DNA from: Bugula neritina
Lineage: Eukaryota; Animalia; Bryozoa
Direction of reading: 5' to 3'
DNA: 64,000 nucleotides
Assembly (NCBI GenBank): GCA_964035545.1
Contig: OZ037773.1
Span: 5,237,751-5,301,750 of the forward strand
Shown: piece after piece, positions 7,133 to 59,301 of the stretch
How the letters are laid out: each line of letters starts with the position of its first letter
How positions within the stretch are numbered: the stretch's first letter is position 1
Notes under the pieces: generated by a model
Seen by the model: the letters and a program-made list of their open reading frames with translations, nothing else
Database searches by the model: none
Told to the model about the DNA's origin: nothing
Program-made: the position numbers and the translations under genes

Positions 7133-9480
7133 ATGCCAAGTTCCATACACGAAATTCTTTTTATTGAAAACTTTGGCCCGATGTGCGGTACAAAAATGCT
7201 GCCAAGCTCCTTAGGAACTCAGTTTTCTCTAGAAAAGTAAGTATAATGATAACTTTTAAGTGCTAAGACAAGTAAATCAATTTTATTTTTAGTAAAACTA
7301 AATGTAATAACTAATACTAATACTAATAGTAATATTAATAAACTAAGTGAGTAAGTCTAATACTAATAGTAATAGTAATAATAATAATTTTTATTATTAA
7401 TATTGTTATTACCATTAGTATTTTTAATTCTAAATATTAATAAGTATTACTATTACTATTGAGTATTACTATTAGTATTAGTATTACTATTAGTATTACA
7501 CTTTTACTTTTACTTAAGTTTTGTGATCATGATGATGATGATGATGGTCATACTCATACTGATACTGTTACTTTAGTGTTACTTTTAATCATTCTCGACT
7601 CACGCTGATCTAATCATCAGCCAGTAACACTAACTGTAAGGCGTAATCATTATCAAAATGAAAATGATTATGATGATCGTTATTAATATTACTTATTGAG
7701 TTATTCAGTTATACTTATAGTTATTGGTGAAATGTTTTTGAAGTTAATATCATTTTATTTAGTTAGAGTGTTATACTTGAACTTATACTCTTATAGTTAT
7801 AGATTATCAGCTCCAGGACTGAAGTTTTTGTTTTCCCTATTTTCTCATTAGGCTACCTATTTATTTATGATTATGGAATTTGTATTTTGTATATGAGTTA
7901 GCATTATATTTGTGGGGAAATTACATACAATTTTTTTCATTGAACTGTAAAACTTTATTGTATTGCAATTGGATGTGTTTATAGAACGGAGAATAAGTTG
8001 AAATGTGAAGCTAGTGAAAACTATGACGTGAGACTTTGCACAGAAAACCTGTGGTGTTCCTGATGTCCCCCACGCTGTAATCACTCAACAACCGTCTGCA
8101 GGTGTGCACCAACATGATATAATATAAAATACTGTTTTACTTGTCATTATTATCAGTTTTGTTGTATGGCTATAGGCCATTTAGATTTCCGCGACAGTTG
8201 CACCAAACATTAATAAAATTAATTTTATTAATAAATTGAACCAAAATTTAATAATAAAAAAAAAAAACAATTTCTCTACTACTGCTCAAAAATGTATAAT
8301 TGTTGAGGAAGCGCTGGATCCGGCAAAACAGTGCCTAGTCGTGATATTAATTTGGCTCTCTTCCAATATTCCCATTGTGCTTTTTTCTAATATTGGCACA
8401 CTGCCAGTTTTATGTTTAGTTTAGCACGCATTACTTCCCTTTCAGGTACAGAGGGCAGCAGCGTGGGGCTTATAACAGCGCCCCCTGTCATTTCTCAGGA
8501 AACTGAGGCTACAAGATTAACAACTTTGCCTCTATCAGCTAGAGTCAATTCCAATGTCAAATTTGTTATCTCCGTTTCCAAAGATGTGGATTTCACATGG
8601 CAGTGCAAACTCCTGAGCAACAACCTCCTTGTTGACATACCTGCTCACCTATCTGTCTATGGCAGCAAGGATAGGTATGCTCCAAGTTTCAGAATATTTA
8701 TTATATTATTTCAAATATCTATTCGACATCACATAGCAGTTTTAATAAACATGCTGTGGTTATATCATAGTAAGTGAAAACTATTTTTAGCTATTGTCTT
8801 TAATATTTACATTTTTCATTTGGTTGCTCTGTGTAATACATCAACTGGCTGATAGTTGGGTGTCTGGTCAATTGATTTTTCCTTTGTTGAATGCTTTGCT
8901 CCAAATTTAGTTTCCAAAAAGAGAAAAAAATGAATTTATAACTGATTTTGAGCTCACTTCCCAAGTGTTCAAGAAAGCACATGAATTTGAAATATGTTGT
9001 TGCCCTACACTTTAAACAAGCCGACATATTGGAAGTTTTATGTTTGGCTTTGAAGAGTAATTGCTTTATGTACATGTCAAATGATTCTGCTTTCACCTTG
9101 ATGTTATGTCTGCGGAAACGAGATAAGATATGTTGGGAGAGAGCTCATGTTGATCCAAACTAACACATTATAGCAAAGAGTGGAGCTAGTTATCAACTAT
9201 TAGGTTCACTCAGCTCTCTATCTGTTCCTGTCATACATGCTTTGACATGTTCTCGTTATCTGTTGGCAGCTTTGTTGCGTTACTGGAGTACGCAGAGACG
9301 GGATTGGCTGTTGAGCACGTCATTGTGAAGCTCATCAAAGACCAAAAGGACCTGCCCAATGCTGTCAGGCTGTTCATGTTCTTTGGCTTTGTGGCTCTCC
9401 CACCTACTCACCCGCTGCTGTCAGCTGTATCTGGAGACTCGGCTAAATATCTTTACTTGGCCTATAAGATTGATTCTTAA
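7133..9480 (+). CDS. OAZ1: Ornithine decarboxylase antizyme (programmed +1 ribosomal frameshift)
   Basis: Exons 7133(or 7181/7196)..7236, 7985..8101, 8446..8674, 9270..9480. ORF1 ends TGG TGT TCC TGA (WCS*) at 8052-8063. The +1 frame continues DVPH..., and the spliced ORF2 contains the antizyme signatures GSKDSFVALLEYAE and VRLFMFFGFVALPPTHP. Confidence 0.96.
8058..8064 (+). promoter_or_regulatory. Antizyme +1 frameshift site UCC-UGA-U
   Basis: TCC TGA T in the conserved context TGG TGT TCC TGA TGT CCC C; polyamine-stimulated recoding is established for this family. Confidence 0.95.
8068..8488 (+). promoter_or_regulatory. 3' frameshift-stimulating RNA pseudoknot (invertebrate type), interrupted by intron 2
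   Basis: Stem 1: CCCCACGCTG 8068-8077 / CAGCGTGGGG 8459-8468 (10/10). Stem 2: ACAGAGGGC 8448-8456 / GCCCCCTGT 8480-8488 (8/9). Confidence 0.8.
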
Positions 9481-14600: not shown

Positions 14601-15798
14601 GGGTTTGAGTTTCATTCAAAAATATTCTTGAGAAGATAATGGTAAACATGGGCATGGTGGCTTTCACTGAAAAAAACAAATTTTTTTAATAAACAAAGAG
14701 CACAATAAATTTATAGCACACTGCTTGCAAGAAGATTTACATTCAAGTCATGCTTATTTTAGATGAGCCCCTGAAACAGCCGCTTAGAACAGATTGAGCT
14801 CTGAGTATGCTTGAAGCCATTGTACAACTATAAAATTTTAAATTGACATTTACAATGACATTGGTTAATTTTATAAAGTATAGTATTATTAAATAAAATG
14901 AGTCTCAATAAGAATTCTACTATGAGTATATGAACTATATAGATGGTGATAATAAGCTGAGCTTGATGAAGCATAACAAACAGCATATTAATTAATTATA
15001 AAAATCAGTGAATAGGTTTACAATATGCATTGCATCAGTTATTATTGGTTTACTATCCACTTCTAGCTAAACAATCACATAACTATAATCCCAATGATAA
15101 TGATTTATAATTATTAATTAGTATTACCATTGGTATTCAGTATCAGTATGATTCTCAGTGTGAGTTTAGTATGAAGCTTAATTACGGTGGCTAAATAACA
15201 AGATACTTTTTAGGATATTTACATATCTATATTTCTAAATTAACAACTGATGATCTTCACTATCACTATGATGATGATCTGATCATCATCAAAATCTATA
15301 AATGTTGAAAAAAATCAATTTATGCAAATGATTTCATCAGCCAAATCGTATTAAATATCAATGCAACAATGAACAGTCTTTTAAAAAGTAATAGTCTTTA
15401 ATTAAGTTTTAATATAAATCATTGAATCATAAATGCCAAGTAGTGGTAGTAGTACCTGTGTGAGAGTAAGAAACGGTAGCTCGCCACAAGCTGATATGTC
15501 CTGACACAGAAGTGATAAACTTTCCAAATGCAAGAGGAAAAATCATAGTAAAATAATAACGCCATGACATCATTATACTGTCTATAGGAGGAATACGCCA
15601 TACTTTTAATACAGGTTGCAAATAAATCCAAATACTCAACAGTTGCACCATCGAGACAGTCATAGGGTATGGAAAGTCTATTAAAAGTGTTTTTGTTAGA
15701 ATATTTGTGGTAGAAGAAATAGCATACCATGCCACACAGAGACATAAAATTCTTATAATATCTTTAGTAGTAAACTCAGTATCCTGGTTGTAACCCAT
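11656..15798 (-). CDS. SLC35E1: Solute carrier family 35 member E1 (triose-phosphate/nucleotide-sugar transporter family), ~374 aa
   Basis: complement(join(11656..11856,12124..12369,13336..13461,14054..14191,14596..14666,15456..15798)), 1125 nt, in frame. Motifs [61 protein letters not shown]. Confidence 0.93.
13087..13276 (+). mobile_element. tRNA-derived SINE, degenerate copy
   Basis: B-box-like GGTTCAAAC, body GGAAGAGCATCCAG...AAAACCCTTTCC shared with the 31089 copy, and a 13-bp flanking direct repeat ATAGGAGAATATA (13074-13086 / 13277-13289). Confidence 0.7.
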
Positions 15799-22200: not shown

Positions 22201-25041
22201 TAGAATTGTAAACTGAACACTCTTACTATAAATAAAATTATAAGAATCATATATCTGAGTTTAAAATAAACTTCAAATGAATTCTAAAACTCTAATGAGT
22301 TGAGGAGCCACATTCAAATTGAAGTTTTGGTCTGAACAAAACATCTTATTAACGTGTCTCATGATTGAACTAAAAAGCAAGTTGGTACCACTAAACTAGT
22401 GAAGCAGATATAATAAACACAAACATATATAAATACCATGAATTACTGTATTAGCAATATTTAACATGTGATAATATGCACGGCACCACATAACAAGTGA
22501 CTGTATGAATGACACTACATAACAAGTGCCCTACAAGTGAGATAGACAATAACTAACTCAATCCCACCTCAATGATAACAAAGAAGTTTTCGGTCATGAA
22601 GAATGTGTGATGTGACGTAGGCGTGACTTTAAATTGTCCCGGAACGGTGAACACCATTTCTGCTGCAGCAAAACTTGACATCACTGAAAACAAAGTCGTA
22701 CATAATCTGAGTGATCTTTGTACTAACCAATACTACTCGCTGTAACACATGAGAATATGAACTTAGACGAATCTCAAGTGGGACTTTCAAGTGTGTATTA
22801 ATACAAGAAGCAACATCATGAGACAATAACAATATTATATACTTAGTTGGACTATTTTAAACTATTTTAAACTAAGCAGAAAGTTGGTAAACAGCAGTGT
22901 TTGGCTAAAAGGAAAACCAAACAAAAAGACTTGCAAAACTCACAAAAATTATTACTTTTTTACCTGTGAAAACATTACAGAAATGAGATTCAAGTCAGAT
23001 AACAGCAAATAATATATAATTTCCGAATATAAAGATAAGTACCATCTCCTTTGGGTGGAACTCTCACAATATGGTATGAGGGTCTACCGCGTACGTGTGA
23101 TCCTAACAAGTATAGGCAGCCATCTTTGTCTATGTGCACGTGCTCAGAGACGATGTCAACACCCAGGCTCTCTGGCAACGTAAGCTGCAAACAAACAATT
23201 GACTCAAGTTTTTATCATGTAACAACTTCATGCTTGGGTAGAATTGGCAAGTGCGCAGCAAAATTTGCAAAGTATAAATAGGGAGAGGGGAAGTGTGAAT
23301 TTAATCCGCCACATAGTAAGTATGCTAATCAACTAAACCTCAATCTAATAATTTATATCAACATCAAAGAATATTTTCCTAATAAAATCCTAATATTTAC
23401 TGCAATTTCAAAACTTCAAGTTTTTAAACTAAAAGCTTACTATTATAATTCCTAAACTTATTCCAATTTTAAATACAGACCTTCATACGGTGTTCTAGAG
23501 TGACAGGGTCAAGGACAGACATGGGCAGACCAATAGCAAGCAAGACATCAGCTTCTTTCCAGTAACATATGTTATGATTGACGTTGTCACTCAATTCTGC
23601 GTCTCCTTTGATCATACTTTTCAACCTGCAACATCACAAATATTAGCCTAGTCAATACACAACTATTGCCTGAACTAACAACCATTTGTAAACAAAAATG
23701 TAGTTCACACATGAAAAGTCAAAATTAGATAAGAAATTAAAAGCAGTTCAGCGTTAGCACCTTAAAATAAAACATGAAACAAAACAATAATTGAGAAATA
23801 AATACCAATAAAAATGGTTATTGACCATTTTATTACATATATTGAGAAATAAAAATGCAATTTTACTGGTACTTCTTACTTGGCAAATCTGCCCTTGGAG
23901 GGATCAGGGGAAACTGGTGTTCCAAATTCAGCACACACAAACCTCTTTGCCTCCGAATTCTTCTTCAGTATATCAGAAGAAACAAACCTATAAACATTAA
24001 AGAATCGTTTTACCTCATGTAAAGAGAAAGAAACCAACACCCAGTAAAAAAAATCATCTAAAATATGATGGTTTATCAGAGAGTGAAAATCCACCATACA
24101 GAAACTAAGCATCACCGATATACATTTCTATACAGATGCGACTGCATTGGATTAGGAATACACACACTACAAGCTGTGGCTTAGAGTGTAGAGGGACTGG
24201 CACCCATACTGACCTGCTCTTGAATGTCACTCCGCCATCTTGGATATTGAAAGCATGCAGAAGTCCCATACCATCCATGGGGAGCGCAGCTTCAAACTCA
24301 CCAAACTCAAACAGACCCGGGCCAATTCTTACCAGTTGCCCATTCAACCAACTGGGTATGTCACCTAAACACATCTGATACTATTATCTTTGCACACACT
24401 TTAGCATAGCACATGGAAATATAAATAAACTCTTATTGAAATAAGCATATAGTTATACAATAGATGTGACATTGCATTTATACTGTCGAGAATCTATATA
24501 GCACTGCTAATAAATGAGACAGATGCATGTGCATGCATATTAGAACAAACATGGATTTACATGAGAGGCAATCATTAAACCAAGAAGAGAATACCGTATT
24601 AGAGACATAGAACAGATTGAGGAAGTTGTGGATGTATATCAAAACTGGGGCTAGAGCTTGGAGTTGGTGTTAACAGGACTTCATATAAACAATGTTCATA
24701 TCACCATGTCTCACTAATAAATGTGATTATGACTATATAATTTCAAGTATGTAGGACAATCTATTTTCATTGCCTTTTTAAAATTTCAAAAGTTCTAGCT
24801 AGTATGTGCAGTAAATCTAAAACATGCACTAATAAATTGTAATAAATCTTACGATCAAGGCACTTCTGACCTCAAATTATTATTTGTGTTTAAAATATTA
24901 CTGAAAAAAAGGATATATATTATTTAAAGAGTACAAAAATCCTCTTACACAAAATTAAATCAACCTACCCTCCACTCTCATGGTCACAGGATCAAGCACC
25001 TCAGCCTGACTGGTATATGGGACTCTACTAGTAGCTGCCAT
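17684..25041 (-). CDS. Carotenoid cleavage oxygenase (BCO1/BCO2/RPE65/NinaB family), divergent, ~526 aa
   Basis: 13 coding exons: 24969-25041, 24214-24364, 23880-23987, 23481-23625, 23043-23184, 22568-22683, 21893-21973, 21200-21353, 20670-20782, 20142-20259, 19310-19410, 18507-18621, 17684-17847 (1581 nt, in frame). Motifs GDIPSWLNGQLVRIGPG, EFGT-PDP, HTFFMTENF, HSSNAYEDG, SEPVFV-P-EDDGVLL and a C-terminal His. Confidence 0.92.
19174..19246. repeat. (TA)n microsatellite
   Basis: Roughly 36 uninterrupted TA units. Confidence 0.98.
19434..19580. repeat. Degenerate ~20-bp minisatellite (CTGYTGTGACATCACAGAGAA-like)
   Basis: About 6-7 diverged units starting ~24 nt upstream of the acceptor of oxygenase exon 11. 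Confidence 0.65.
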
Positions 25042-25985
25042 TTCGGATCCTGAAAGAAATGAAGGTGTTGACACTGTTTTACAATAACTAGCTAGAACTT
25101 GTGCAATTAGTTTGCCAAACAATATAGAACTTTTGAGTATAAAGTTAGGTTTAAAAATATATTTTAGAAACATAAATTTATGAGCAAAGTATTAATTTAC
25201 ATATTAGTCTAATAAAAAGTAAATATAGAAGAGTATGGGGCAGAGATAGTTTTCATGACACCTTGTAAATACTTCAAGTGATATTTTATTTTAGATAATT
25301 CAACACAGTTCTTACTCTTTTTTCTAATTTTGTTCATGTCTACTTATTATGATCAGTATTTACACTAAATTTCACAACGTGTTTTCATGTCTGTGATATG
25401 TAATAAATCAATTGATCAATCAAATAAAAAAATTTCATAAATAATGCAAGACATTAGAAAACAAACTTTACTTAATTTAAATATTATACTAACATGATAA
25501 CCACAATTCTATTAAATACCAACAGCAATACTGAAAATATGACAAAGGAATTTCATTTATTTGGTATGTGGATGTTACATAGTAAAAAAATGATAACCGG
25601 TTTGATTCAAGCTGAAACAGTGGTATATAAATAATGCGAGTATAAGTACAATGACTCAGCAGGCTGGTAAGTAACTAAATTTGAGCGATCAACTTAAAAT
25701 GATAATCTTAATATAAAACTAAAACTGCCATAGTAAGTTAAGTGCGCACTGTTAAGTATTCACTAGGGACACCAATTGCCACTTAGCTACACACACAGCT
25801 ATAGGAACACTGTGTGAAAGACTAAGTCATGTACGTGTCAGGTGTACAGATGCAGACTGAGAGACAGCATGAGGCATCAAGAAAAACCGTAATTTAGCTT
25901 TAGCAACATGATTTAGATTAACTTAATGCATTATGAGAAGTCAAGTTAACATTAACAACCATGAAAACAAATGTATAATTATCAT

Positions 25986-27152
25986 CAGGGTTGGGGTCAA
26001 TTACATGTAAATGTAATTAATTACAATTACAATTACATGAAGATTTGTCAATTACAATTACAATTATAATTACAGTTAAAAATAAATGTAATTAATTACA
26101 ATTACAATTAAATGGTAATGTAATTAATTACAATTACAATTACTTTTGTTCTCACAAGGAATAAATAGAAGTCACTTCTAGGGTCCAACTACCCGGGGCA
26201 GTGTTGACAGTGGTGAACCTCTTTTGTTTTCTACAGTGATACTACAGGGTCATTCCATACCAAATCAACCAACTTTCAAGGGGTCCCACGTCTTTGTGTC
26301 TCAGATTTTGCTCATATTTACACTAAATAGACCTACACATGTTCAGATTACCATTCGTGAATATTTCTGGCCTGACACAAAAACATTTTGAGAAATTACT
26401 ACTTTGGTGAACAAAGGTTGGAAAATATTTTGAGAAAAATTTGTGATTTATACTTTTAGACCAATTTATAAGTAATTTAAAATTTGATTAGGCGAGTATT
26501 TGAAATTTTTCAAAATCTACAATGATTTGTTCATATTCAATGACTTTGCATATATGCACACAAAGTATTCTGTAGTATGTGTTGCTACTAGTGCAAATTG
26601 ATAGGTATTATCAAATCACACAGCAAATTTTAAGGCTCAGTCTAGAAAAATGATTGAGATATATAGACGTTTATAGATTAGTCTAAAAGTAGAAATCACA
26701 AATTTTCCTCAAAATGTTTCTCAACCTTTGTCCACAAAAGTAGTCAGTTCTCAAAAAAAATTTGTGTCAGGTCAGAAATACTGAAGAAGAGTACTTGAGG
26801 CATGTGTAGGTCTATTTGGTTTAAACATGAACAAAATCTGAGACACAAATAGACGCGGGCAATTCGGTGAGCTGGCATGGAATGACCTTACTATATTGAC
26901 CTAACTATCTGAACTTGTTATTTAACAGTAGGCATTGTAGAAAAAGGAGTTTTTTAAGATTTAAAAGTTTGAAGTAATTGACATGTAATTATAAAGTAAT
27001 TGTAAAATTCAATTACATTAGATATGTAATTAATTACAATTACAATTACAATTACATTTCTAAACCTCAATTACAAATTACATTCAATTACTTGAAAAAA
27101 TGTAATTAATTACAGCCAATTACAATTACAAATTACAATTACCCCAACCCTG
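25986..27152. mobile_element. Non-autonomous hAT DNA transposon with (AATTAC)n subterminal repeats
   Basis: TIRs CAGGGTTGGGGT...ACCCCAACCCTG and an exact 8-bp TSD ATTATCAT (25978-25985 / 27153-27160). Confidence 0.92.
26247..26888. mobile_element. Foldback MITE with ~225-bp imperfect inverted arms, nested in the hAT element
   Basis: GGGTCATTCCATACCA ... TGGCATGGAATGACCT; arms ~26247-26470 and ~26670-26888 are reverse-complementary. Possible 4-bp TSD TACA/TACT; superfamily not assigned. Confidence 0.8.
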
Positions 27153-27255
27153 ATTATCATTATGAGTATTACTATTAGTATGTCAAAGTAAAACTTAAAT
27201 ATTGAATTTGACCTACACAAGGTAAAAATCAAACTTGAAGTTAAAGTAACACTAA

Positions 27256-27599
27256 GCCTAGGGCCACACGGTGCGTATTTTCGCATGCGAAAATTGAAGC
27301 CACAAGTAGCAAAGGCGTCCACTGTAGCGTCAGTGATGCGTGATAAATAAAGCTCTCATTTTTAAATCGCACTCGCTTTCAATAAAACGCAATTTACTGG
27401 AATTCAGCACTAAAATAAAGAAATTGGGCTCGCTTAATAACTACCAGCCAATTAGGTGACGACGACAGCGACGATTCGCACTTGCGTTGAAAATGCAGAG
27501 CGACAAGTGCGAATGTTTTCTCAACGCGCACAGTGGACACCTTTGCTACTTGTGATTTCAATTTCCGCATGCGAAAATACGCACAGTGTGGCCCTAGGC
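27256..27599. mobile_element. PIF/Harbinger-type MITE (344 bp)
   Basis: ~70-bp TIRs beginning GCCTAGGGCCACAC, TAA TSD on both sides. The reconstructed empty site CAC-TAA-GTG fits the PIF/Harbinger CWCTWAGWG target preference. Confidence 0.9.
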
Positions 27600-27989
27600 T
27601 AAGTGAGTCTGACTGTAATCAGTAATGATTATAACATTTATTACTATATTAATCTAATCACCTTAGTCTAATCATCTAATGTATTAGCATCACCATTAAC
27701 ATTACCTTAGTTTATTACCTCTTTTGAGGTAGGATTTCCACAGCAACTGGAATGTCCATAGGGAAGCCTCTACTGACAACTTATATTAGGCCAGAGTTAG
27801 CATTTGCTACAGCATTTGCTGTTGTGCAATTATTTATTATATTTTCAGGGCTTCTCACAAATATTTTGTAGCAGAAAACTAGTGGGGAATATGCTTTTTC
27901 TAGCTGATATCGAGATAAGCTCTCCTCTGGCAGCTGTTAGGGTGGCTACAGTTACAAGCTCCTTGTCTGTAATAATCTCATCATAGGCT

Positions 27990-28395
27990 CTGGATAGAGT
28001 TCGGTGCTGATCTTCATTCTAAAGAATCCAGGTCAGTAAACAAAGTCAATAGTTTTTTCTTCTGTCTTCCTACAACCGGAGTCCTAACTCATCAGTGTGT
28101 CCTTCCGGATTGCTTATGAACTGCATGGCACTGTTCTGAACCAGCTCTATATCATGGACTTTGCTTCTAGTCGCAGGATCCCAAAGCACATATGTATAAT
28201 CGAGTACAGGTCTGCATAGACTTGTGTAAGCCAGTAGCTTAACCTCCTTTGGGGCATCATACACCAAGTTCTTGATTCCTCCAAGGACTTTCCGGGACTA
28301 GGTACACTTCCCATTTATATGCTGATCAAATCTTAGGTCTGACTAGATTCTTACCCCAAGGTATTTGGTGCAAGGCATGTGGTACTGAGTCTGTA
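27990..28395 (-). mobile_element. Decayed non-LTR retrotransposon (CR1/L2-like LINE ORF2 3' fragment)
   Basis: TKYLGVRI*SDLRFDQHI (RT KYLG motif with a stop), then in another frame KLLAYTSLCRPVLDYTYVLWDP...IELVQ, the typical post-RT segment. Confidence 0.85.
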
Positions 28396-30615
28396 ATGTG
28401 ATATGGGAGTCATTTCTTTTCATTGAAGGGCATTTTGCATTTCACAGACAACTCATAGATGGTGTTAATGTCCTTTTGATGAAATTGCATGTATCACCAT
28501 CAGTATTATCACGATATTTGATAATGATAATCAATATAATCACTTTGAACTTGCCATTGGCCATTGCAGTGATTGCATATTCATATTGATATTGATATAC
28601 CACTTTCAAACTTGAAATTAATCAGAATCACAATTCATAATCATAATGATAATGGTAATGATTATGATATTCATAATGCTTATACTTATACAGTTATAGT
28701 TATGTTATGCAATTTCAAAGTCAATCTGAAAATGAAAAATTGAATCTAAAATTATAATACTTTTTTATAATCATAATAATAATATTAATTACATAAATAA
28801 AATTAGAGAATTCAGTTTCACATTCATTTTCAAACAGTTTGACATTATGATCATCGTTAGGTGATTATAATATTGATAATTATAATGTCTGTTAATAATG
28901 ATATTCTAATTCATAATCATAATGATAATCATATTGCTTGAGCTTAACTCTAACATTTGAATTTTGATAAAAAATTAAAATTGCTATTAGTATTAGGCTA
29001 CTATTAGTATTACTATTACTATTAGCATAGAAAAATAATGATACTAATATAACATTAATCAGTTAATTAGTTGTCATCATCAACTCAGCACCTGCAATAG
29101 TATTAGTATAAGTATAACAATTGCCTTAGCAGTGTTTGACTGGAAATTGTGCATTGAACTTGAAGTTCAATAGCATTGATTAGTTTAGTTTAGTTTTAGT
29201 TGAATAAATAAATACAACTGTCGCTATTTGGGTAGGGGTTATTCTCAACCCCCAAACTTCGAAACCAATACTATTTTAGGAAAAAAAAACAACTATTGTC
29301 AGTCGAATGGCCAATGAATTGGAGTTGTATTCTACCTAAGCGTATTGCCGTATTGTCAATAGACCCAGTTCCACTACCATTGTGCATTGTTGTGAAAGTA
29401 TTTTCAACAGCACAAGACAGCATGTTAACTAATACACTTTGTTCAGTAATGCGACACAAATTATAAGTATTTCTATATTATGTTAGTGTAACTTCAATCA
29501 ATAAAAGCTTAGAAGTTGAAAATTAATTTGCAAGGTTTATAACGTAAACATGCACAGGTCTCATGCAATTCTTTTAAAATCAACCGTCGCATTAGGCATC
29601 AAAGAAGACAAGTATCAAGTATAGCTAGTTAAGAAGCTATGCTCCTATATCAAATATACATGACTATCTCATATAGTTTTCAGAAAAGAGAATGCTAGCC
29701 AGTATTTAAAGTTCATGATCAAAAGTAGATTAAAATTAATTCATAGCACCCTTTATTGACTCCAATAGAAAACCCTGTGGCTAATGCCAAACAGAATAAG
29801 AACTAAATAATAACTGCAACATCAAGTTTGAAAATGCATAAAAATTAAATAAAATAGCCAAAAAATCATAACACATTGTTCAACAATACATGTAGAAAGC
29901 TTGATTTGCAAATCAAATTTAATAAAAGCTCTTCAGTAACCTAATTTTTTACAACGTTAGAAAACTTTGAGACTCAATGGATTCAAATAACATAGTGCTT
30001 TGATAACAGCAAAGACATAATAATATGCAACAATGTAGACACTTGAATAGCCCAAAGTGTATCAGACATAGAGCACCTGTAAAGGAGGTTTGTCCTCCTA
30101 TACTGTAGAATTTATTCCAATGCACATACTTTATGCTGTGCCAGGTTTTTTAAAAGATATACAATGTCCTGGGTACTAGAAGACTCTAAACTATGATACT
30201 CAAATTGAATTGCTATAAAAAATTATCTCTCTCATATAAATCAAAGCGATGCTGTTTAAGCAATATATAACTAACAAGTGATACAACTGATTTGATAATC
30301 AAATAAAAAGGACCTAAAATCAATAACAAAATAATAAATGTTATAACAAACATGATGAACATAATACATTTAATAAAACATAATAAATTACATGTATAAG
30401 AAAAAGCTGTACAAAAAACTATCATGGATGAAATAGTATTAGCAATAAGTTACTACCAGATGATTGTTTTAGAACATAATAGCAAGAGTTGTCTTTCCAA
30501 ATGGGTGCTGAAAAGATTGTTGATATTATTGAGGCAAACCATCCCACGCTATTGTGGTGAGAATTCTAGCACCAATGATTGTCAAATAAGAACCTGTCCA
30601 ACCTGCGAAGTGATG

Positions 30616-33600
30616 TCATACTTCAACATTAGGATCTGACTGTTCATAGCCATTAGCTGGCATCTTATCCTCATTCTTAATAACAGCGGGCTCTGTGCGA
30701 GTGTGCCATACGAGGACCTGTAACATGACAACCACATAACTTTATTCAAGGCAATGCAAATCTAATTAATAACATAACGAAATCACATGACTATGCAAAG
30801 CAGTACATTAGCAAATCCAATTTATAACTTAAGTAACTCAACTATTCGACTAATTTGATAGATTACCTCTTTACAAGAAGCCAGTTTTGGAAAAATTTGA
30901 ACTATTGAAATATGATATCATTTTCTTTACTCATTACAGTTTGAAAGTGGACAGATAACTTTCCCAAGCATACAAATACATGCAGAGTTTTCACTTTCTT
31001 TTCATTCAATACTGTACATTTGTATCTGACTTTGTACTCATACAAAAACGTTGTTCATTTATAGATGTTTTTCACATAGGAACATGAAGGGAACAGCCGT
31101 GACCTAGTGGTTAGAAGGCAGGCCTAGTGTAACACAAGTCAGGGGTTCAAGTCCTAGTGAAGAAAAACATCCAATGAGGATTGCTCCTGTGTCCCAGTTG
31201 AGCTGCTCACATTATGTTACCAGCATAGTAGGAAACTCAGCCCTTAACTGGCTTAAAACCTTTCCTATAAGTATGGAGACTTTAAAAAGATGTGAGTTTC
31301 ACATAAAAACATGCAAGTGTCCAAACTTAGTTAATGAAAACAGATAAGGTAATATTACTAAATGGTAACAATCAATAAAATCGTCTATGAATACTTTCAT
31401 AGTTGATGTCCGAACTGACCACCCACATAGCCAGGTCAACAATGACTTATAATATAACCTTATTCTTACCTCAGTGCACATCTTAGCCCTAGGCTCCAAG
31501 TCACTGAGAGTAACACCAAGGGACTGTAGTAAGCCTGTCTCTTGAAATCCCCTTTTAGCTGTGATGTCAAATTTAGCCAAAGAGTTCTACAAGGATAATA
31601 ATATAATTAAACCTGATATAATAGAATGTGTGGGATGTAGAAATGATAGCGTAACATTGGTATACTTGCTAGCATGAATATATACAGGAATATATGCTGA
31701 AAATCAATTGGAGTGTAAAATTGGAAGGAGTCTAAGAAGTCAAGTTTCAAGTACCTCAAGTATAAAACAAACTTGTGCCTCAAGTATAAGACAAGTACCT
31801 CAAGCATAAGATAAGTACTTCGAGTAGAAGGCAAGTACCTCAAGTATAATACAAGTACTTTAAATACAATACAAGTATTTCAAGTACAATACAAGTACCT
31901 CAAGTACAAGACGGAGATTAACTGCAAACCCAGCCATATCCATAGCAAACTTCCTCTCCTTTCTATACCAGAGTGTATGCCAATCAGTCACCTTAAAAAG
32001 AACTTGATTATTAAAACTTACGTCATAACAATAGATACATTCACAGCTATGCCCAATCAAAGTTACGTTCTCCTAAATTATTTTGCTGGTTGAAGTTGAT
32101 GCAAGAGTTTGATATAGAATGAGTCCTAGCAGCTAAACAATTGGCAGGTTTTATTGTTACACATCAGTTATGACTTAATGTTGAAGATAAGGAAGACGTC
32201 TTATTCAGTTTCATGGTGGATACGATTAAATAACATTACTTTTATAGCTTAATAGCACATTCGCGCACGCTACACACACACACACACACACGCACGCTCA
32301 CACACACGCACAGAAACACACGCACACAGAGACACACACACACACGCATACACACACACGCACAGAAACACACACACATATGCATACACGAAGGCACACA
32401 GAGACAAACACACAAAAACTGTGAACCGGGAACGTTTTGAAGTTTGTTCCTTTTTAAACCAAGAAGAGCCGTAATAAGCTTATAACTCGTAGCTTCTGTT
32501 AATAATTATATAATAGAATTTCAAGGAAGGCAATAACATATTTGTAAATTCAAGCCTGAGAGTTCAAGTAGCTACAAGATTTACTGCGAGCCTTGCACCA
32601 TGCAAATAGCCATATAAACTTACTTTGCCATTTGTTATTATTGGAGCTTCGTACCGTAACTTCCCAACCAAACCAACTGGCCACACTGAAACCACCTTGG
32701 TATGCCTCATCTAAAACACAAATTATATGCCAACCTAAATTCATTAATAAACTTAAACAGTATTTACATATTTCTAAAATTCTCCTTTTCAATCACAACT
32801 AATAAATATTTTTCTTCTTAGGAAAAGATTTACAATAAAATACCAACACATATGATAGAATACCTCATGGAAAAGTTCAGTGCTATAGGTGTTGTCATCA
32901 TCAGCAAAGTAGACAACTCCATGATGATAGTCTGCATTTAAATTTGTTCTGAGCCAGGATAGCCCAGTATTTCTTTGTAGAACACCTAAATACAGATATG
33001 GGTTCATAAAAAACACCTAAATACAGATATGGGTTCATAAAAAAATATGAAAGAAGAGAAGGGAAAAGCTGCTCCATGGATATTTCCTGTGAAGTTGAAT
33101 TCTATCTCAAACTATGTCTATTTTGGTCACACTTGTCTCTGTACACTGTAAATACTTCTATCAGTGAACCTAAAGCTTTATGATTGCTAGGTGACCAAAT
33201 ACTTGAACTATCACTTTATTGGGTAAGTTTTATGGCTTGTGGTTATGGAAGTAGAATAACACACCTCTTGGCTTCAGCCAATTGGGATCCTGTTCCTTCA
33301 GTTTCACTTCTGGGGGTGTGACTGATAGCAGGTGGGTGGTGTTTAGCCCGGTGTTCTTCAAAAACTTGGTAACAAGCGGGCTCTTTACTTGTGCGTCTTC
33401 AACCACGATCCAATGAATGTTAGGAACTGATTTGAATACTGTAGCTAATCTGGTCAACTCAGCTTTCTATAATATACCATAGTCTGTGCACCCAAGAGAA
33501 ATGTAAGTGACTCAGTTACTACAACTATAATAATTTTAAAAATCAAATTTTATTTTAAAGAAAATATTCAAATTTTATCAAAGCTACATTAATCATCTCC

Positions 33601-34877: not shown

Positions 34878-36084
34878 GATTTCTAATTTTCACCTCCAGT
34901 TGCAATAATTCTGTGTTTTTTTAAGCAAAAGCTTCGGGTAGCCTAAAACAAATGTATATTTTATTAAATTAAATTGTATAACTATAATTTCAGTCATATT
35001 TGTTTTAGCATAGATTCAAACATTAACTCATTCTTATTATTATCATAGTTATAAGCCGAACAATACAAATATACTTTTAATAATCATGATAATCATAAAA
35101 AATTGGCCATCAATTCATACATTTATTTGGAGTCTAATGGGCATTTGTACATTTCACTCAGTGCCATTAGTAAGTCTAAGTAAAACTACAAATCATAGTT
35201 AAAAATTCAAAATATTAGCATTACGTATTACTATTACTACCAACCACATCCACTGTGACTAGAAGACTGAATATGAATATGACTATGGTCTATGGGTAGA
35301 ACTCTCGCTATCAATAATAACATAAGCATAGCAATTAGTTTCCCATTTATAATCTTTAATCACAGGCTATTAAAAGTATGAAAATTTGTTCATGCTTAGT
35401 TTTGCATAATTTTTAATTTCTCAGCCTTTACATTCATTACTAGTAAGATTACTATTAGTATTAACTTTTAGTATTATAACTTGAATTTTAAACTTATAGT
35501 TAAACTTTATGTTACACCAATTAAAATTATAACTATTATAGTTGATATTAGCATTAGATTTAGTGACTATTACACCCATTAGTATTCGGCTTAGTAGTGT
35601 TACTATTAATATTAGTATTAGTACTACTATTACAGTATTACTTATAATTTTTCCTTTTTACCATAACTATTACTATTAGTATAACTACTACTACTAGTAT
35701 TAGAATAAATACTTAAAATTAAAAGTATTAGTATTATTATTCCTATAAGTATTAATATTACATTTAAATTTACTTTTAGTTTTAGCCTCTTCTCCAGAGT
35801 TCCAGTTTCCTTTGACCCATGAAGTTGTAACTGTTGTTAAAGCTAATAGTAGCCTAATACTAATAGTAATAGTAATACTATATTTGTTAATAACAAATAT
35901 AACAATGTCACTTTCAATGTGAATGTTAATCATAAACATATTGTTAATCGTAATGACTAATGAAGTAATGTTATAGTTATACAAATATAAAATAAGATAA
36001 TCATTATCAAATATCATAACGATAATCATATTGATATTCTGATTCATAAAGATATACAAAAAATAATACCCAGATAATAAGTAC

Positions 36085-36450
36085 CTAAATAACGGTAGAG
36101 CACAACCAATCTACATCACGAGCACATCATAGCACATAAGATGTAGCCCATCGCTTGAACTTTTGAGTCTTTTCAGTTTTCTGCTTTTCTAATTCTACAG
36201 TTGATGTTGATGTTCTCACCAATTATCATGCCAACACACTAAAAAGGAAGCTGTAGTAAGGTTTTAACTCCAATCGCTATTATGTATTATTTTGTCAAAC
36301 CAATTTCTATTTGATAACCGATATAAAAGTGATGTTCTGTGGTGTCTGTTGAGCGAATCATTGGCGTTTATCGCAAAGAACTTGGTTTCTTTTTGGCGTT
36401 CACGTTTCTGTTTGGATTGATTCATAATTATTGTTACCCGAGTTCAAGAG
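36085..36450. promoter_or_regulatory. Putative bidirectional promoter and non-coding first exons of B3GAT3 (-) and ARMT1 (+)
   Basis: Head-to-head genes; candidate donors AG|GTACTT (minus, 36084) and AG|GTAAAA (plus, 36451) face outward; locally more CpG; periodic low-complexity tracts on both sides. Confidence 0.55.
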
Positions 36451-36994
36451 GTAAAACCAGTTAATCATCAACTACCAATTATAAAATTAACACACACTAG
36501 AATGAGTTTTAATATTTAGCTATAAGCATAATTGCGTTCAAATCACATCAGCGAAAAGCTAGTGCAACACCTACTCCTAGGGCTAGTGACTGTGACACTG
36601 ACTGTGAGTCCTACGGCTACTAATTCTAAGTACTACGTCTACTACTAAAAAGTGAGTACTACTACTACTAGGAGTAAGACTCAGTAACACTAACTCAGTA
36701 AGTGTAACTATATGGTCGGTACTATAACTAATAGTAATATCAATAGTAACACCTTAGGCTTATATTATTATACATTACAATTTGAATTACACCGACAAGC
36801 TCACTATTCAGTATTCATATCCGCATTGTAGCAGACTTAAACTTAAAGTTAATTGCGGTTGTGTTTCACTTAAAGTTAATCATAATGAGTCAGTGAATCA
36901 TGCTATCTCTTTTTTCGTTAAACAGTTGGTGTTTGTTTCACTATTCTTTGTTACTATAGTTTACCGTGTAAACCTCGACTTGTGGACCTAAACT

Positions 36995-58100: not shown

Positions 58101-59301
58101 TCTTTGTTGACCTTTCAATGGTGGTTGCTCGTCTAGCAACGATTCTTTCATCTACCAGAGAAGCTCTAATTTACTCATCACAACAAAGTCGTGTTACAAG
58201 CCAAGTTTTAGTATACATTAGTCTAAGTTTTTGTTATAGTGCTGGAGCGCATAAGTGATGCTCCATAGTTTTTATTTTACTGTTGGCTAGAAAACAAAGC
58301 TATGTCATGGATAAAGCTACAGCAAAAAACTTGTAAAAACTATTAGAAAAGTTTGTAATTGCCTGCACTATGACATTTACAATAATAACAACTAGAACAA
58401 ATAGCTGAAGAAAATGAAGTTACAAAATGTATTATGTGCATGGGCAGATGATTTAAAGACATGAGGAGCTTTAATAAAATAGTATTTCAACACAAATATG
58501 CCATATGGCTTATTTCTATTGAATCTAAGGTTATTTGAGACTGCATTCCCCTGTGCAAGTCAAATTAAAGCGTCTATTTTATCATGAGTTTGCTAAATAA
58601 GGGCCATCAGATTGTTACAGCGAGTTAAAGTTGTTTTTGCATGTTGTTTTATAACTATGAGTTGTTTTTGTAACGTTCAGGCTAAAATCGTATATCAACT
58701 AGTTAGCAGCATCCAAGCCCAAAGTTAGACTATGTACTAATCACCTTCATTTAGCCTTAGGTGTAGTAGTAGAGAATGAGAATCTTAATATGCCTACACA
58801 TTATTTAAATGTCTTTGTGGATTTGAATTTTAATTTGGGGTTCGGTTTGACAATTTTGTGAGATCACAACTTTGTTGTAATGCTCATTTTTAGAACACAG
58901 GCTTTTTCAAACCTCTTCGTTATGATTATTACACCTACCTACCAGGATACTGTGAGAAGAAGTTTCAAAACTAAAACTATGAATATGCAACAATATAAGA
59001 AGTAGAAGTCAAGTTTCATATCAGTTTGAATTCCACTATAGTATTTTCAGTTATTTCAAACTGAAGCTGTAAATGAGACCTTGTTGATGATATTAAAAAT
59101 AATATCAAACTGTACGACTTGCTGATTATAATATTAATAGCAAAGTGTACAAATGATAGTACTACTCATACTATAAGTATAAGTATGATACCAAAAGTAA
59201 TACTTAGAGTTAGTAATACTCACTGTGATAGGAATAGTAAAGAGAGATTTATTGAGAAGAAGCACAGCAACTGTGCTTTGTTTCTTTCCAATTCCACTCA
59301 T
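46128..59301 (-). CDS. ex: Expanded / FRMD6-like FERM-domain Hippo-pathway protein, ~734 aa
   Basis: 11 exons: 59224-59301, 57471-57561, 56853-56920, 54649-54725, 53950-54115, 52535-52756, 51972-52043, 51205-51367, 49156-49422, 46862-47574, 46128-46415 (2205 nt, in frame). FERM motifs LFGLA, YLRVQYYVE, YYFLQLKEN, FDPREYFPAW. Post-FERM RESYIYS and SIISTTSSTTTSGIVSDR, a PPPSY (PPxY) motif and C-terminal LPMLSALCND, which I recall as Expanded-type blocks. The exon 8 donor could alternatively be at 51241. Confidence 0.85.
47604..48142. repeat. 30-bp minisatellite GTCAAGTCATTGTACTAAGTGTAAAGTTGT
   Basis: About 18 units, two of them a 31-nt variant (AATATTTATCCC); intronic, no spacers. Confidence 0.97.

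What the first reader, a model, noticed from the sequence alone, without database searches (positions are those of the whole stretch)
7260..7810. Drifting ~6-bp-periodic tract marks the first intron of five genes in the window
Seen: shortly after the first splice donor the sequence switches to quasi-hexameric runs whose unit changes gradually (TACTAA TAGTAA..., ATGATT ATGATG..., TTATAC TTATAG...). It occurs in antizyme (7260-7810), SLC35E1 (~15040-15455), B3GAT3 (~35020-36060), ARMT1 (~36580-36900) and expanded (~59100-59223); I did not see it in internal introns. It had predictive value: following the 59100 tract located the FERM first coding exon, which the ORF track lacks. The tracts do not align with each other, so they are not one transposon family. 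Inference: a lineage-specific promoter-proximal signal (chromatin, nucleosome or modification platform, loosely analogous to the 10-bp PATCs of C. elegans introns) or the footprint of a TSS-linked slippage process. I know of no named element like this.
Basis: partly seen in the sequence, partly recalled or inferred. Interest (0 to 1): 0.8.

Follow-up and report, generated by a model that had tools for sequence, protein, structure and literature searches.

The report
Hexamer-repeat DNA filling first introns
In this small AT-rich animal genome, the first intron of many genes, starting right after the first exon, is 0.1-1 kb of drifting 6-base repeats that grow one unit at a time, so the DNA itself marks gene starts in a way I could not find described.

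Summary
Lag-6 self-similarity reaches 0.39-0.62 in the tracts against a background of 0.29. A composition-matched null gives no such segment.

In this window, 96% of tract positions lie within 1.2 kb downstream of six first-exon donor sites, which cover 11% of the window (p<5e-5). The carotenoid oxygenase gene is a sixth.

At one-directional promoters, only the transcribed side carries a tract. At the B3GAT3/ARMT1 head-to-head promoter, both first introns are almost entirely tract.

The feature is genome-wide:
- One 24-mer has 3,460 near-matches.
- 25 independent tract-anchored loci sit at switches of strand composition of the divergent type (p=0.002).
- 21 of 26 independent loci have two tract arms 250-840 bp apart; most cores had no repeat match, and two checked genome-wide were single-copy.

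Copies of one multi-copy element show how the tracts change. Their tracts have 11-16 indels per comparison against 3-6 outside. The commonest indel is 6 bp; small ones are insertions and large ones deletions.

The tracts are not a transposon family. They are absent from the orthologous intron in three other organisms.

The cause of the localisation and any function are untested, because no RNA or chromatin data exist. The scan noted this feature at ten or more other places in the same genome.

The parts
7133..7236 (+). Antizyme first coding exon (ATG at 7133, donor GT at 7237).
   Evidence: Read. The UCC-UGA-U frameshift site lies in the next exon at about 8055. The exon call is an inference from sequence, with no RNA support.
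7262..7741 (.). Tract T1, the given finding. It runs TAATAC/TAATAG (7293-7390), then the reverse-complement form TATTAC/TATTAG (7394-7503), then ACTTTT, (TGA)n, TCATAC/TGATAC, ATGATK and TTATAS blocks.
   Evidence: lag-6 match 0.62. The inverted halves fold as RNA with z=-6.3.
15456..15798 (-). SLC35E-type transporter first coding exon.
   Evidence: Pfam TPT, profile positions 2-96, E=2e-20. Donor CAG|GTACTA at 15455.
15053..15455 (-). Tract T2, weak. It begins at the donor (GTACTACTACCACTAC...).
   Evidence: (lag-6 match 0.39).
24969..25049 (-). Carotenoid oxygenase ATG exon. An acceptor (tttctttcag|G) precedes it, so a 5'UTR intron lies upstream.
   Evidence: RPE65 profile positions 19-70 are in the next exon.
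28457..29185 (-). Tract T3, proximal part. It abuts a CpG-containing putative non-coding exon 1 and promoter at about 29190-29480.
   Evidence: (lag-6 match 0.52). Exon 1 is inferred, not shown.
27153..27700 (-). Distal remnants of T3 (27153-27252 and 27601-27700), split by a long-inverted-repeat MITE at 27253-27600. A further transposon piece at 27701-28406 separates them from the proximal part.
   Evidence: The 27701-28406 piece recurs in L031 and L047.
34943..36084 (-). B3GAT3-like (glycosyltransferase family 43) intron 1. It runs from the donor TTTAG|GTACTT (GT at 36084) to the acceptor before the ATG exon (ATG at 34877). Tract T4 (35002-36059) fills about 93% of it.
   Evidence: Glyco_transf_43 profile 1-99 on the minus strand; acceptor, then the MARFTGRDIFHILILFSAVWILVLF signal anchor.
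36085..36450 (.). Non-periodic core holding the two divergent first exons and the shared promoter of B3GAT3 and ARMT1.
   Evidence: CpG observed/expected 0.62-0.66 here against 0.44 for the window. The core is single-copy in the genome.
36451..36925 (+). ARMT1 intron 1, from the donor AAGAG|GTAAAA to the acceptor aaacag|T. The ATG lies in exon 2 at 36995. Tract T5 (36504-36883) fills about 80% of it.
   Evidence: The ARMT1 domain lies further downstream on the plus strand.
59224..59301 (-). FERM-protein ('expanded'-like) first coding exon, MSGIGKKQSTVAVLLLNKSLFTIPIT, with donor ACA|GTGAGT.
   Evidence: FERM_M lies downstream on the minus strand.
59113..59223 (-). Tract T6, short and weak. It starts at the donor (GTGAGTATTACTAACTCTAAGTATTAC...).
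   Evidence: (lag-6 match 0.45).

Best explanation
The tracts are hypermutable, degenerate hexamer arrays. They are a form of cryptically simple DNA built on a 3-bp lattice of TA or AT steps.

Composition:
- Dominant units are TAATAS and its complement, ATGATW/ATCATW, TTATAS and TACTAS.
- At least 59 distinct unit types occur.

Position:
- They occupy the 5'-most 0.1-1.1 kb of the first intron and start within 0-60 bp of the first donor site.
- At head-to-head promoters they form two arms around a roughly 350-800 bp single-copy core that holds both first exons.

Dynamics: they are made and kept by gain of single or double hexamer units (slippage-type tandem duplication) plus point mutation. 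Occasional larger deletions balance the gains. This gives the 'drifting unit' look and erases any alignable homology between loci.

What is shown:
- The periodic anatomy.
- The first-intron, transcribed-side position.
- The genome-wide spread.
- The unit-length indel dynamics.

What is inferred:
- The confinement to the first intron reflects a local state of the 5' end of transcription units in the germ line. That region is transcribed but lies before the gene-body chromatin and mismatch-repair regime begins, which would let slippage products persist there and be pruned elsewhere.
- On this view the tracts are a sequence footprint of active promoters, much as CpG islands are footprints of germ-line hypomethylation.
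- Any function would be secondary and structural.
For: Periodicity far above chance.

First-intron position:
- Six of six conserved genes with identifiable 5' ends carry a tract.
- 96% of tract positions fall in 11% of the window, p<5e-5.
- Upstream sides of the four one-directional promoters show no signal.
- Acceptor sites before the ATG exons of three genes place their tracts inside 5'UTR introns.

Independent DNA:
- In a 200-kb block of another chromosome, the one strong tract pair (22.0-22.6 and 23.3-23.6 kb) sits exactly where AT skew flips from plus to minus.
- In 25 independent tract-anchored loci from seven chromosomes, the skew with tracts masked is higher on the left than on the right in 19 of 24 (Wilcoxon p=0.0016).
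- 21 of 26 independent loci have two arms 250-840 bp apart. 20 of the 26 inter-arm gaps had no repeat match in the DNA I held, and the two gaps searched genome-wide were single-copy.
- The two cores I read are flanked by outward-facing GT donors.

Dynamics, from copies of one multi-copy element 1-3% diverged in substitutions:
- 11-16 indels per comparison inside tracts against 3-6 outside, over equal lengths.
- The modal indel length is 6 bp; the others are mostly 3, 9, 12 and 18 bp.
- Polarised by the third copy, the small events are +6 or +12 insertions and the 30-bp and 39-bp events are deletions.
- Substitution rates in tracts and flanks are similar.

Abundance:
- 3,460 near-matches to one 24-mer.
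- Tract bins attract 40,000-130,000x summed contig depth against roughly 100 in flanking unique bins, in the same organism and in two runs about 8% diverged.

Cytosine-5 methyltransferase genes are present and genome CpG observed/expected is 0.44-0.51. Gene-body methylation with unmethylated 5' ends is therefore plausible.
Against: - No RNA, CAGE, chromatin or methylation data exist for this organism in the tools. Start sites and the non-coding first exons of three genes are inferred from sequence only.
- Generic slippage explains neither why the unit is 6 bp rather than 2-5 bp, nor why non-transcribed DNA upstream of promoters lacks arrays.
- The mismatch-repair and chromatin explanation is borrowed from human-cell work and is untested here. 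The MutS_I search was uninformative.
- Element copies at scattered genomic sites still gain units. Array growth is therefore at least partly intrinsic to the sequence, not purely position-dependent.
- Near-universal presence at conserved genes, and whole introns made of tract, would also fit selection.
- Simple donor-motif orientation tests at the inner arm edges were not significant.
- The genome-wide sample is small: 200 kb of unbiased sequence plus 26 independent loci selected for containing a tract.
Confidence: 0.5

Rival explanations
1. The tracts are a selected structural platform. AT-rich DNA with a 3/6-bp lattice and few A/T runs is kept next to promoters because it organises chromatin there. 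It could position or stabilise the first downstream nucleosomes, bound the open promoter region, carry a base modification on the ApT/TpA lattice, or bind an abundant protein that reads 3- or 6-bp repeats such as TAAT cores. Slippage would be only the means by which the platform is renewed.
For: - Six of six conserved genes in the window carry a tract, and whole first introns consist of it.
- The core-plus-arms architecture has a consistent core size, median about 460 bp.
- A mobile element carries the same core-plus-arms layout.
- A5/T5 runs are 3-fold depleted although the tracts are 75% A+T, and TAAT is 3-fold enriched.
- 64% of units fit a TANTAN or ATNATN lattice against 12% expected.
Against: - There is no sequence conservation. 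At least 59 unit types occur, and substitution rates in tract and flank are similar.
- Strength varies greatly between genes: SLC35E1 and the FERM gene have only about 100-150 bp of weak signal.
- There is no 10-bp component that would set rotational nucleosome positioning.
- Nothing functional was tested.
Confidence: 0.3
2. The tracts are by-products of mobile elements. They could be decayed copies of an element that carries such arrays, simple-repeat tails of retroelements, or accumulated target-site-duplication footprints of cut-and-paste transposons that prefer open chromatin at gene 5' ends.
For: - A multi-copy element with at least five copies on four chromosomes carries a core flanked by tracts.
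- Three transposon insertions sit inside tract T3, one with a perfect 8-bp duplication.
- Families found in T3 recur in other tract-anchored loci.
- 8-bp insertions outside tracts in element copies look like footprints.
Against: - Host-gene tracts share no alignable sequence with each other or with the element, beyond repeat texture.
- 20 of 26 gaps between arms had no repeat match, and the two searched genome-wide were single-copy.
- The identifiable insertions have 8-bp, not 6-bp, duplications.
- New units arise next to similar existing units, as in slippage.
- There are no element termini at tract ends.
Confidence: 0.08
3. The tracts act at the RNA level in the first intron. They could form long hairpins, act as branch-point-like (UACUAA) or U1-like decoys, or suppress premature polyadenylation, so as to control early elongation or splicing.
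For: - The antizyme tract folds into a long imperfect hairpin, z=-6.3 against shuffles.
- 5' splice-site-like hexamers are 2.4-fold denser than elsewhere.
- Tracts lie only on the transcribed side.
Against: - Poly(A) signal hexamers are not depleted: 199 observed against 215 expected.
- Both orientations of every unit occur within one intron, so no strand-specific motif is kept.
- The hairpin potential follows automatically, because TAATAS and its complement differ by one base per unit.
- Donor-like motifs show no outward bias.
Confidence: 0.07
4. The tracts are chance low-complexity texture of AT-rich introns. They appear in first introns only because first introns are long.
For: The genome is 33% G+C and rich in simple repeats.
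Against: - A composition-matched null gives no segments.
- Long internal introns of the same genes have none.
- The same texture is found at skew switches on other chromosomes.
Confidence: 0.02

Closest known systems
Promoter-proximal short tandem repeats (yeast and human promoter microsatellites; Reinar et al. 2024, PMC11686069)
   Same: Both are tandem repeats concentrated at gene borders, hypermutable by unit-length slippage, and proposed to tune chromatin and expression.
   Different: - The survey of 1,270 eukaryotes found mono- and dinucleotide repeats enriched at gene borders far more than hexamers.
- Here the unit is 6 bp and impure (63-86% matches).
- The arrays are 0.1-1 kb long.
- They lie downstream of the first exon, inside intron 1, not upstream of it.
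- They occur at every conserved gene in the window.
Cryptically simple sequence (Tautz, Trick and Dover 1986; from my own knowledge)
   Same: Both are scrambled mixtures of related short motifs produced by slippage plus point mutation, with no alignable homology between loci.
   Different: Cryptic simplicity is described as scattered through genomes. The strict first-intron, transcribed-side placement and the fixed 6-bp/3-bp lattice are not part of that concept.
PATCs, periodic An/Tn clusters in C. elegans introns (from my own knowledge)
   Same: Both are periodic, AT-rich, non-coding DNA in introns of a class of genes, thought to relate to germ-line chromatin state.
   Different: - PATCs have a 10-bp period built of A/T runs spread through introns.
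- Here the period is 6 bp, lag 10 is at background and A/T runs are 3-fold depleted.
- The tracts are anchored to the first donor site.
CpG islands as footprints of germ-line promoter state (from my own knowledge)
   Same: This is a works-like analogy only. Both would be a sequence-composition domain of about 1 kb at promoters, created by a locally different mutational regime and usable to predict gene starts from sequence.
   Different: The chemistry is entirely different: escape from deamination versus unit duplication. CpG islands span the start site, whereas these tracts lie beside it on the transcribed side.
Intron-mediated-enhancement signals of promoter-proximal plant introns (from my own knowledge)
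   Same: Both are compositional signals specific to introns within about 1 kb of the start site. They are redundant and dispersed rather than a single motif.
   Different: Those signals are not tandemly periodic. No expression effect has been tested here.

Membership tests
Microsatellite / short tandem repeat | Head-to-tail repeats of a unit of 1-6 bp | tested here: met
   Tandem Repeats Finder gives period 6 (and 12, 18, 24) arrays. The lag-6 match is 0.39-0.62 against 0.29 background.
Microsatellite / short tandem repeat | One unit repeated with high purity | tested here: not met
   Matches are 63-86%. The unit changes every few copies, and 59 canonical unit types occur in 294 windows.
Microsatellite / short tandem repeat | Length change by whole units (slippage) | tested here: met
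   Between copies of one element, the commonest indel in tracts is 6 bp. The others are mostly 3, 9, 12 and 18 bp. Counts are 11-16 in tracts against 3-6 outside.
Cryptically simple sequence | Local excess of several related short motifs in scrambled order, beyond composition | tested here: met
   The order-2 Markov null gives no segment at the threshold used.
PATC (periodic An/Tn clusters) | About 10-bp periodicity | tested here: not met
   Lag-10 and lag-11 matches are 0.19-0.31, at or below the background of 0.29.
PATC (periodic An/Tn clusters) | Built of A or T runs | tested here: not met
   A5/T5 runs occur at 3.2 per kb in tracts, against 9.9 per kb elsewhere and 6.9 per kb expected from dinucleotides.
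Interspersed repeat (transposon) or satellite family | Copies align to a common consensus with defined ends | tested here: not met
   Tracts match each other only at 66-75%, in many registers and on both strands. Among 30 loci, only the copies of one element and a few small interspersed repeats align.
Promoter-proximal tandem repeats | Concentrated within about 1 kb of the transcription start | tested here: met
   Tested by sequence inference only. The basis is first-exon donors, acceptors before ATG exons and skew switches. No start-site data are available.
Promoter-proximal tandem repeats | Lie upstream of, or across, the start site | tested here: not met
   Upstream sides of four one-directional promoters have background scores. 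The signal is in intron 1.

The most novel reading that the evidence does not exclude
This lineage has a process tied to the 5' end of transcription units that rewrites first introns into a 6-bp lattice. It could be a mutational regime of promoter-proximal germ-line chromatin, or selection for a periodic AT-rich platform. Either way, gene starts would be readable from raw DNA, as with CpG islands, by a different mechanism and on the transcribed side only. This would be a new class of genome-architecture signal, and a natural system for studying how chromatin state steers repeat instability.
Probability: 0.4. Interest if true: 0.85.

Novelty: new variant of a known kind. Interest (0 to 1): 0.7.

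Why it matters
If the pattern holds genome-wide, three things follow:
- It gives an annotation-free predictor of first exons and promoters in this lineage. Here it pointed to an unannotated 5'UTR intron of the carotenoid oxygenase gene and to the FERM gene's first coding exon.
- It gives a clear case in which tandem-repeat birth and growth are confined to one chromatin or transcription compartment. That makes the link between promoter-proximal state, mismatch repair and repeat instability testable outside human disease loci.
- It raises the possibility of a sequence-encoded structural role for first introns.

It also matters practically. These tracts attract thousands-fold multi-mapping depth, so they will confound read mapping and variant calling at the 5' end of many genes.

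Tried and rejected
- **RNA evidence.** The one run search found no RNA run. The contigs laid cannot show starts or splice joints. They showed only multi-mapping at the tracts and roughly 8%-diverged relatives.
- **A start-anchored genome-wide test.** I planned to use the N-terminal exons of Ras-family genes.
- **Avoidance of poly(A) signals.** Rejected: 199 observed against 215 expected.
- **Outward-facing donor motifs at the inner arm edges.** Not significant with four simple patterns. The six donors in the window show a weak consensus, so the test has little power. Two loci read by eye do show outward donors.
- **CpG clusters as a promoter proxy.** Too noisy. Young transposons also score, and the cores are only modestly enriched (observed/expected 0.75 against 0.44-0.60).
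- **Gaps between arms as transposon insertions.** Largely rejected. Of 26 gaps, 20 have no repeat match, and two checked genome-wide are single-copy. Two gaps are mostly interspersed repeats.
- **Loss of a large-loop mismatch-repair gene (MutS_I count).** Uninformative, because exon-by-exon matching found only one exon.
- **Organism identity.** I first read the record prefix 'BRYA16' of the nearest outside relative as 'bryozoan'. Similar prefixes on unrelated records (SOLA22, CHAS20) show these are data-set codes, so I withdrew that reading. The organism is not identified.
- **Literature.** Seven searches found no description of such tracts.
Full report
**1. What is at 7260-7810**

The sequence after the antizyme first coding exon (ATG at 7133, donor GT at 7237) turns into hexamer-periodic DNA within about 30 bp. 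The blocks run in this order:
- TAATAC/TAATAG units at 7293-7390.
- The complementary form TATTAC/TATTAG at 7394-7503.
- ACTTTT, then (TGA)n, then TCATAC/TGATAC.
- After a short non-periodic gap, ATGATT/ATGATG/ATGATC and TTATAC/TTATAG, reaching about 7741, with a last echo near 7800.

Tandem Repeats Finder reports overlapping period-6 and period-12 arrays at 63-100% matches.

I scored periodicity as the lag-6 match minus the mean match at lags 4, 5, 7 and 8, in 90-bp windows. This score peaks at 0.54 in the tract. A null that keeps local trinucleotide statistics gives no segment at 0.25 anywhere in 64 kb.

Within the tracts, matches are raised at lags 6, 12, 18 and, more weakly, 3 and 9. They are lowered at lags 1 and 2. 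The background is flat at 0.29. The texture is therefore a 3-bp lattice with a dominant 6-bp period, and it is poor in homopolymer runs.

**2.

The same score finds tracts at:
- 15053-15206, weak, with texture continuing to the donor at 15455.
- 35002-36059.
- 36504-36883.
- 59113-59265, short.

The remaining period-6 hits are other things:
- (TA)n and (AC)n runs.
- A 22-mer satellite.
- The AATTAC subterminal repeats of a 1,167-bp hAT-like element at 25986-27152, with terminal repeat CAGGGTTGGGG... and a perfect 8-bp duplication ATTATCAT. It is inserted into the distal end of the missed tract.

**3. Position relative to genes**

Gene identities and strands were checked with Pfam:
- TPT profile positions 2-96 in the exon at 15456-15798, minus strand.
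- RPE65 N-terminus at 24105-24374, minus strand.
- Glyco_transf_43 profile positions 1-99 at 32789-33457, minus strand.
- ARMT1 domain at 41524-44846, plus strand.
- FERM_M at 53917-54156, minus strand.

In three genes the tract follows the first coding exon directly: antizyme, the SLC35E-type transporter, and the FERM gene. The FERM gene's exon at 59224-59301 reads MSGIGKKQSTVAVLLLNKSLFTIPIT.

In the other three genes, the ATG-bearing exon is preceded by a good acceptor site. The tract therefore lies in a 5'UTR intron:
- B3GAT3-like intron 1, 36084 to 34943, is 93% tract.
- ARMT1 intron 1, 36451-36925, is about 80% tract.
- The carotenoid oxygenase ATG exon (25049-24969) has an acceptor. The tract at 28457-29185 abuts a CpG-containing stretch at about 29190-29480 that would be its non-coding exon 1.

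Three transposon insertions have stretched that last intron to about 4 kb. With them removed, the tract is about 950 bp, like the others.

Numbers for the window:
- 96% of tract positions lie within 1.2 kb downstream of these six donors, which cover 11% of the window (circular-shift p<5e-5). The result is the same without the oxygenase gene.
- The score decays to background 400-1100 bp from the donor.
- At the four one-directional promoters, the upstream side has no signal at all.
- B3GAT3 and ARMT1 share a 366-bp non-periodic core (36085-36450), with a tract-filled intron on each side.

No RNA data exist to confirm start sites. These are sequence inferences.

**4. Is it genome-wide?**

The window is G000:C9:5.24-5.30 Mb of a 216-Mb, 321-contig assembly.

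Abundance:
- One 24-mer of the commonest type has 3,460 matches with at most one mismatch.
- An ATGATA-type 24-mer has 246 matches.
- Contigs of three public runs pile up on the tract bins at 40,000-130,000x summed depth, against roughly 100 in flanking unique bins. One run is the same organism. The other two carry the same label but are about 8% diverged in exons. The motif class is therefore hugely repeated in this genome and in its close relatives.

An unbiased 200-kb block of chromosome C1 is rich in transposons, including two Ty3/Gypsy elements, and has few tracts: 0.65% of positions against 2.7% in the gene-dense window. Its one strong pair (22.0-22.6 and 23.3-23.6 kb) brackets a 700-bp unique stretch exactly where AT skew switches from plus to minus. 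In the window, that is the signature of divergent transcription.

Thirty loci anchored on the ATGATA-type 24-mer reduce to 26 independent loci once copies of one multi-copy element are collapsed. For the skew test one more locus, sharing a transposon piece with another, was dropped, leaving 25. Results:
- With tracts masked, AT skew is higher on the left than on the right in 19 of 24 usable loci (Wilcoxon p=0.0016). The test is unaffected by locus orientation, and random windows show no such bias.
- 21 of the 26 independent loci have two arms 250-840 bp apart, median about 460 bp.
- Of the 26 inter-arm gaps in these loci, 20 have no repeat match in the 350 kb I held. The two searched in the whole genome are single-copy.
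- The two cores I read are flanked by outward-facing GT donors followed at once by tract, just like B3GAT3/ARMT1.

At least ten first-stage notes report the same texture beside promoters elsewhere in this genome. They are unchecked, but they agree.

**5. How the tracts change**

Five of the anchored loci are copies of one element on four chromosomes. Three copies are 99.9-100% identical, and two are 92-95% identical. The element carries a CpG-rich core with tracts on both sides.

Aligning the copies gives a natural experiment:
- At 1.2-3% substitution divergence, the tract half has 11-16 indels per comparison and the non-tract half has 3-6.
- The modal indel length is 6 bp (5-10 events per comparison). 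The rest are mostly 3, 9, 12 and 18 bp.
- Polarised with the third copy, the 6-bp and 12-bp events are insertions of a unit next to a similar unit.
- The 30-bp and 39-bp events are deletions.
- Substitution rates in tract and flank are close: 3.0 against 2.0%, 2.9 against 2.2%, and 1.2 against 1.2%.

This is the classic microsatellite regime of small-step growth and large-step loss, acting on hexamer units. Together with point mutation it explains both the gradual drift of the unit and the lack of alignable homology between loci.

Three of about seven new units differ from their neighbour at the variable sixth base. That is more than later mutation should give at this divergence, and I cannot explain it.

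**6. What the units are**

Among 294 strongly periodic 36-bp windows there are 59 canonical units. The commonest are AATACT, AATAAT, AATGAT, AATAGT, AATCAT and AAGTAT.
- 36% fit TANTAN and 28% fit ATNATN, against 6% each by chance.
- TAATAS and its reverse complement differ by a single A/T change per unit. Orientation flips inside one tract, and the resulting hairpin potential (z=-6.3), therefore arise by ordinary drift and need no inversion.
- Tracts are 75% A+T, yet A5/T5 runs are 3-fold depleted.
- TAAT is 3-fold enriched.
- Poly(A)-signal hexamers are at expectation.

**7. Lineage specificity**

I found the SLC35E first coding exon in other organisms and fetched the surrounding DNA. In the contigs long enough to judge, the 1.2 kb after the exon has no hexamer signal. 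These are from a relative at 70% protein identity (L052) and from 54%-identity organisms (L056, L057). An (ATT)n run in an internal intron of L052 is an ordinary trinucleotide repeat.

The host organism could not be named.

**8. Interpretation**

Shown:
- Degenerate hexamer arrays.
- Confinement to the first intron, on the transcribed side.
- Presence on many chromosomes.
- Turnover by unit-length indels.

Inferred: why they are confined there. My preferred reading (0.5) is a mutational footprint. Slippage products persist in the part of the transcription unit that is transcribed but not yet under gene-body chromatin, methylation and mismatch-repair surveillance. They are pruned elsewhere. Cytosine methyltransferase genes and strong CpG depletion show that a methylated-body, unmethylated-5'-end organisation is plausible.

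This reading does not explain the preference for 6 bp.

Alternatives:
- A selected structural platform (0.3) fits the regular core-plus-arms layout and the depletion of A/T runs. It has no direct support.
- Transposon by-products (0.08) and RNA-level roles (0.07) are less likely, for the reasons given under the rivals.
- Chance is excluded.

**9. Comparison with what is known**

The tracts meet the definition of cryptically simple DNA. They meet the microsatellite definition for unit size and slippage, but fail it on purity.
- They fail both defining features of PATCs that could be tested (the period and the A/T runs).
- They are not a transposon or satellite family.
- Promoter-proximal tandem repeats are well known. 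However, the broad survey I read found mono- and dinucleotide repeats enriched at gene borders far more than hexamers. Those repeats also lie upstream of genes, not inside intron 1.
- Seven literature searches found nothing that describes this feature.

I file it as a new variant of a known kind, with a substantial chance (0.4) that it reflects a genuinely new start-site-anchored process or signal.

Noticed in passing
window 25986-27152: A 1,167-bp non-autonomous hAT-like element. It has terminal inverted repeats CAGGGTTGGGGTCAATTAC / ...GTAATTGGGGTTGGGAC-type ends, AATTAC hexamer subterminal repeats and a perfect 8-bp target duplication ATTATCAT. It is inserted into hexamer-tract DNA. A related copy is in L037 (positions 2-348).
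   Followed up: partly
window 27253-27600 and 27701-28406: A MITE with roughly 70-bp inverted ends that is rich in CpG (16 per 200 bp), and a second transposon piece that recurs in the tract-anchored loci L031 and L047. Three insertions sit in one roughly 950-bp tract, which suggests that tracts or promoter-proximal DNA are preferred landing sites.
   Followed up: partly
L038, L045, L048, L046, L051 (G000 C3:16.71 Mb, C5:4.20 Mb, C6:2.33 Mb, C5:8.24 Mb, C7:12.24 Mb): A multi-copy element of at least 3 kb, with copies 92-100% identical. It carries a CpG-rich core flanked by hexamer tracts and has no long open frame in the 3 kb seen.
   Followed up: partly
te.aln columns 102 and 294 (L051 against L038 and L046): Two 8-bp insertions lie outside the tracts in one element copy. 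They are possibly excision footprints of hAT-type elements.
   Followed up: no
window 24969-25049 and about 29190-29480: The carotenoid oxygenase ATG exon has an upstream acceptor. This implies an unannotated non-coding exon 1 about 4 kb upstream, next to the tract.
   Followed up: partly
window 47604-48142: A 30-bp minisatellite with 17.8 copies at 92% matches. It overlaps open frames on the plus strand and adjoins a 265-aa open frame (46811-47608, minus strand) that has no Pfam match.
   Followed up: no
window 43529-43735: A 22-bp satellite (ACTCTATCTCACTCTCACACTA) with 9.4 copies, inside an ARMT1 intron.
   Followed up: no
G000 small contigs (C101, C110, C66, C160 and others): Full-length Ras-family matches with many in-frame TAA/TAG codons lie on small contigs. 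This fits the ciliate (TAA/TAG = sense codon) contigs that other notes report in this assembly. Contig C303 carries an uninterrupted bacterial-type DNA methylase.
   Followed up: no
L012:2418-7921 and L021:3-8637 (G000 C1:5.10 and 5.19 Mb): Two Ty3/Gypsy-type retroelements with long open frames (protease, RT, RNase H, integrase). A weak hexamer tract lies just upstream of the gag-like frame of the first. I observed these only.
   Followed up: no
element copies: About three of seven newly inserted hexamer units differ from the neighbouring unit at the sixth, variable base (C/G or A/G). That is more than later mutation should produce at 1.2% divergence.
   Followed up: no
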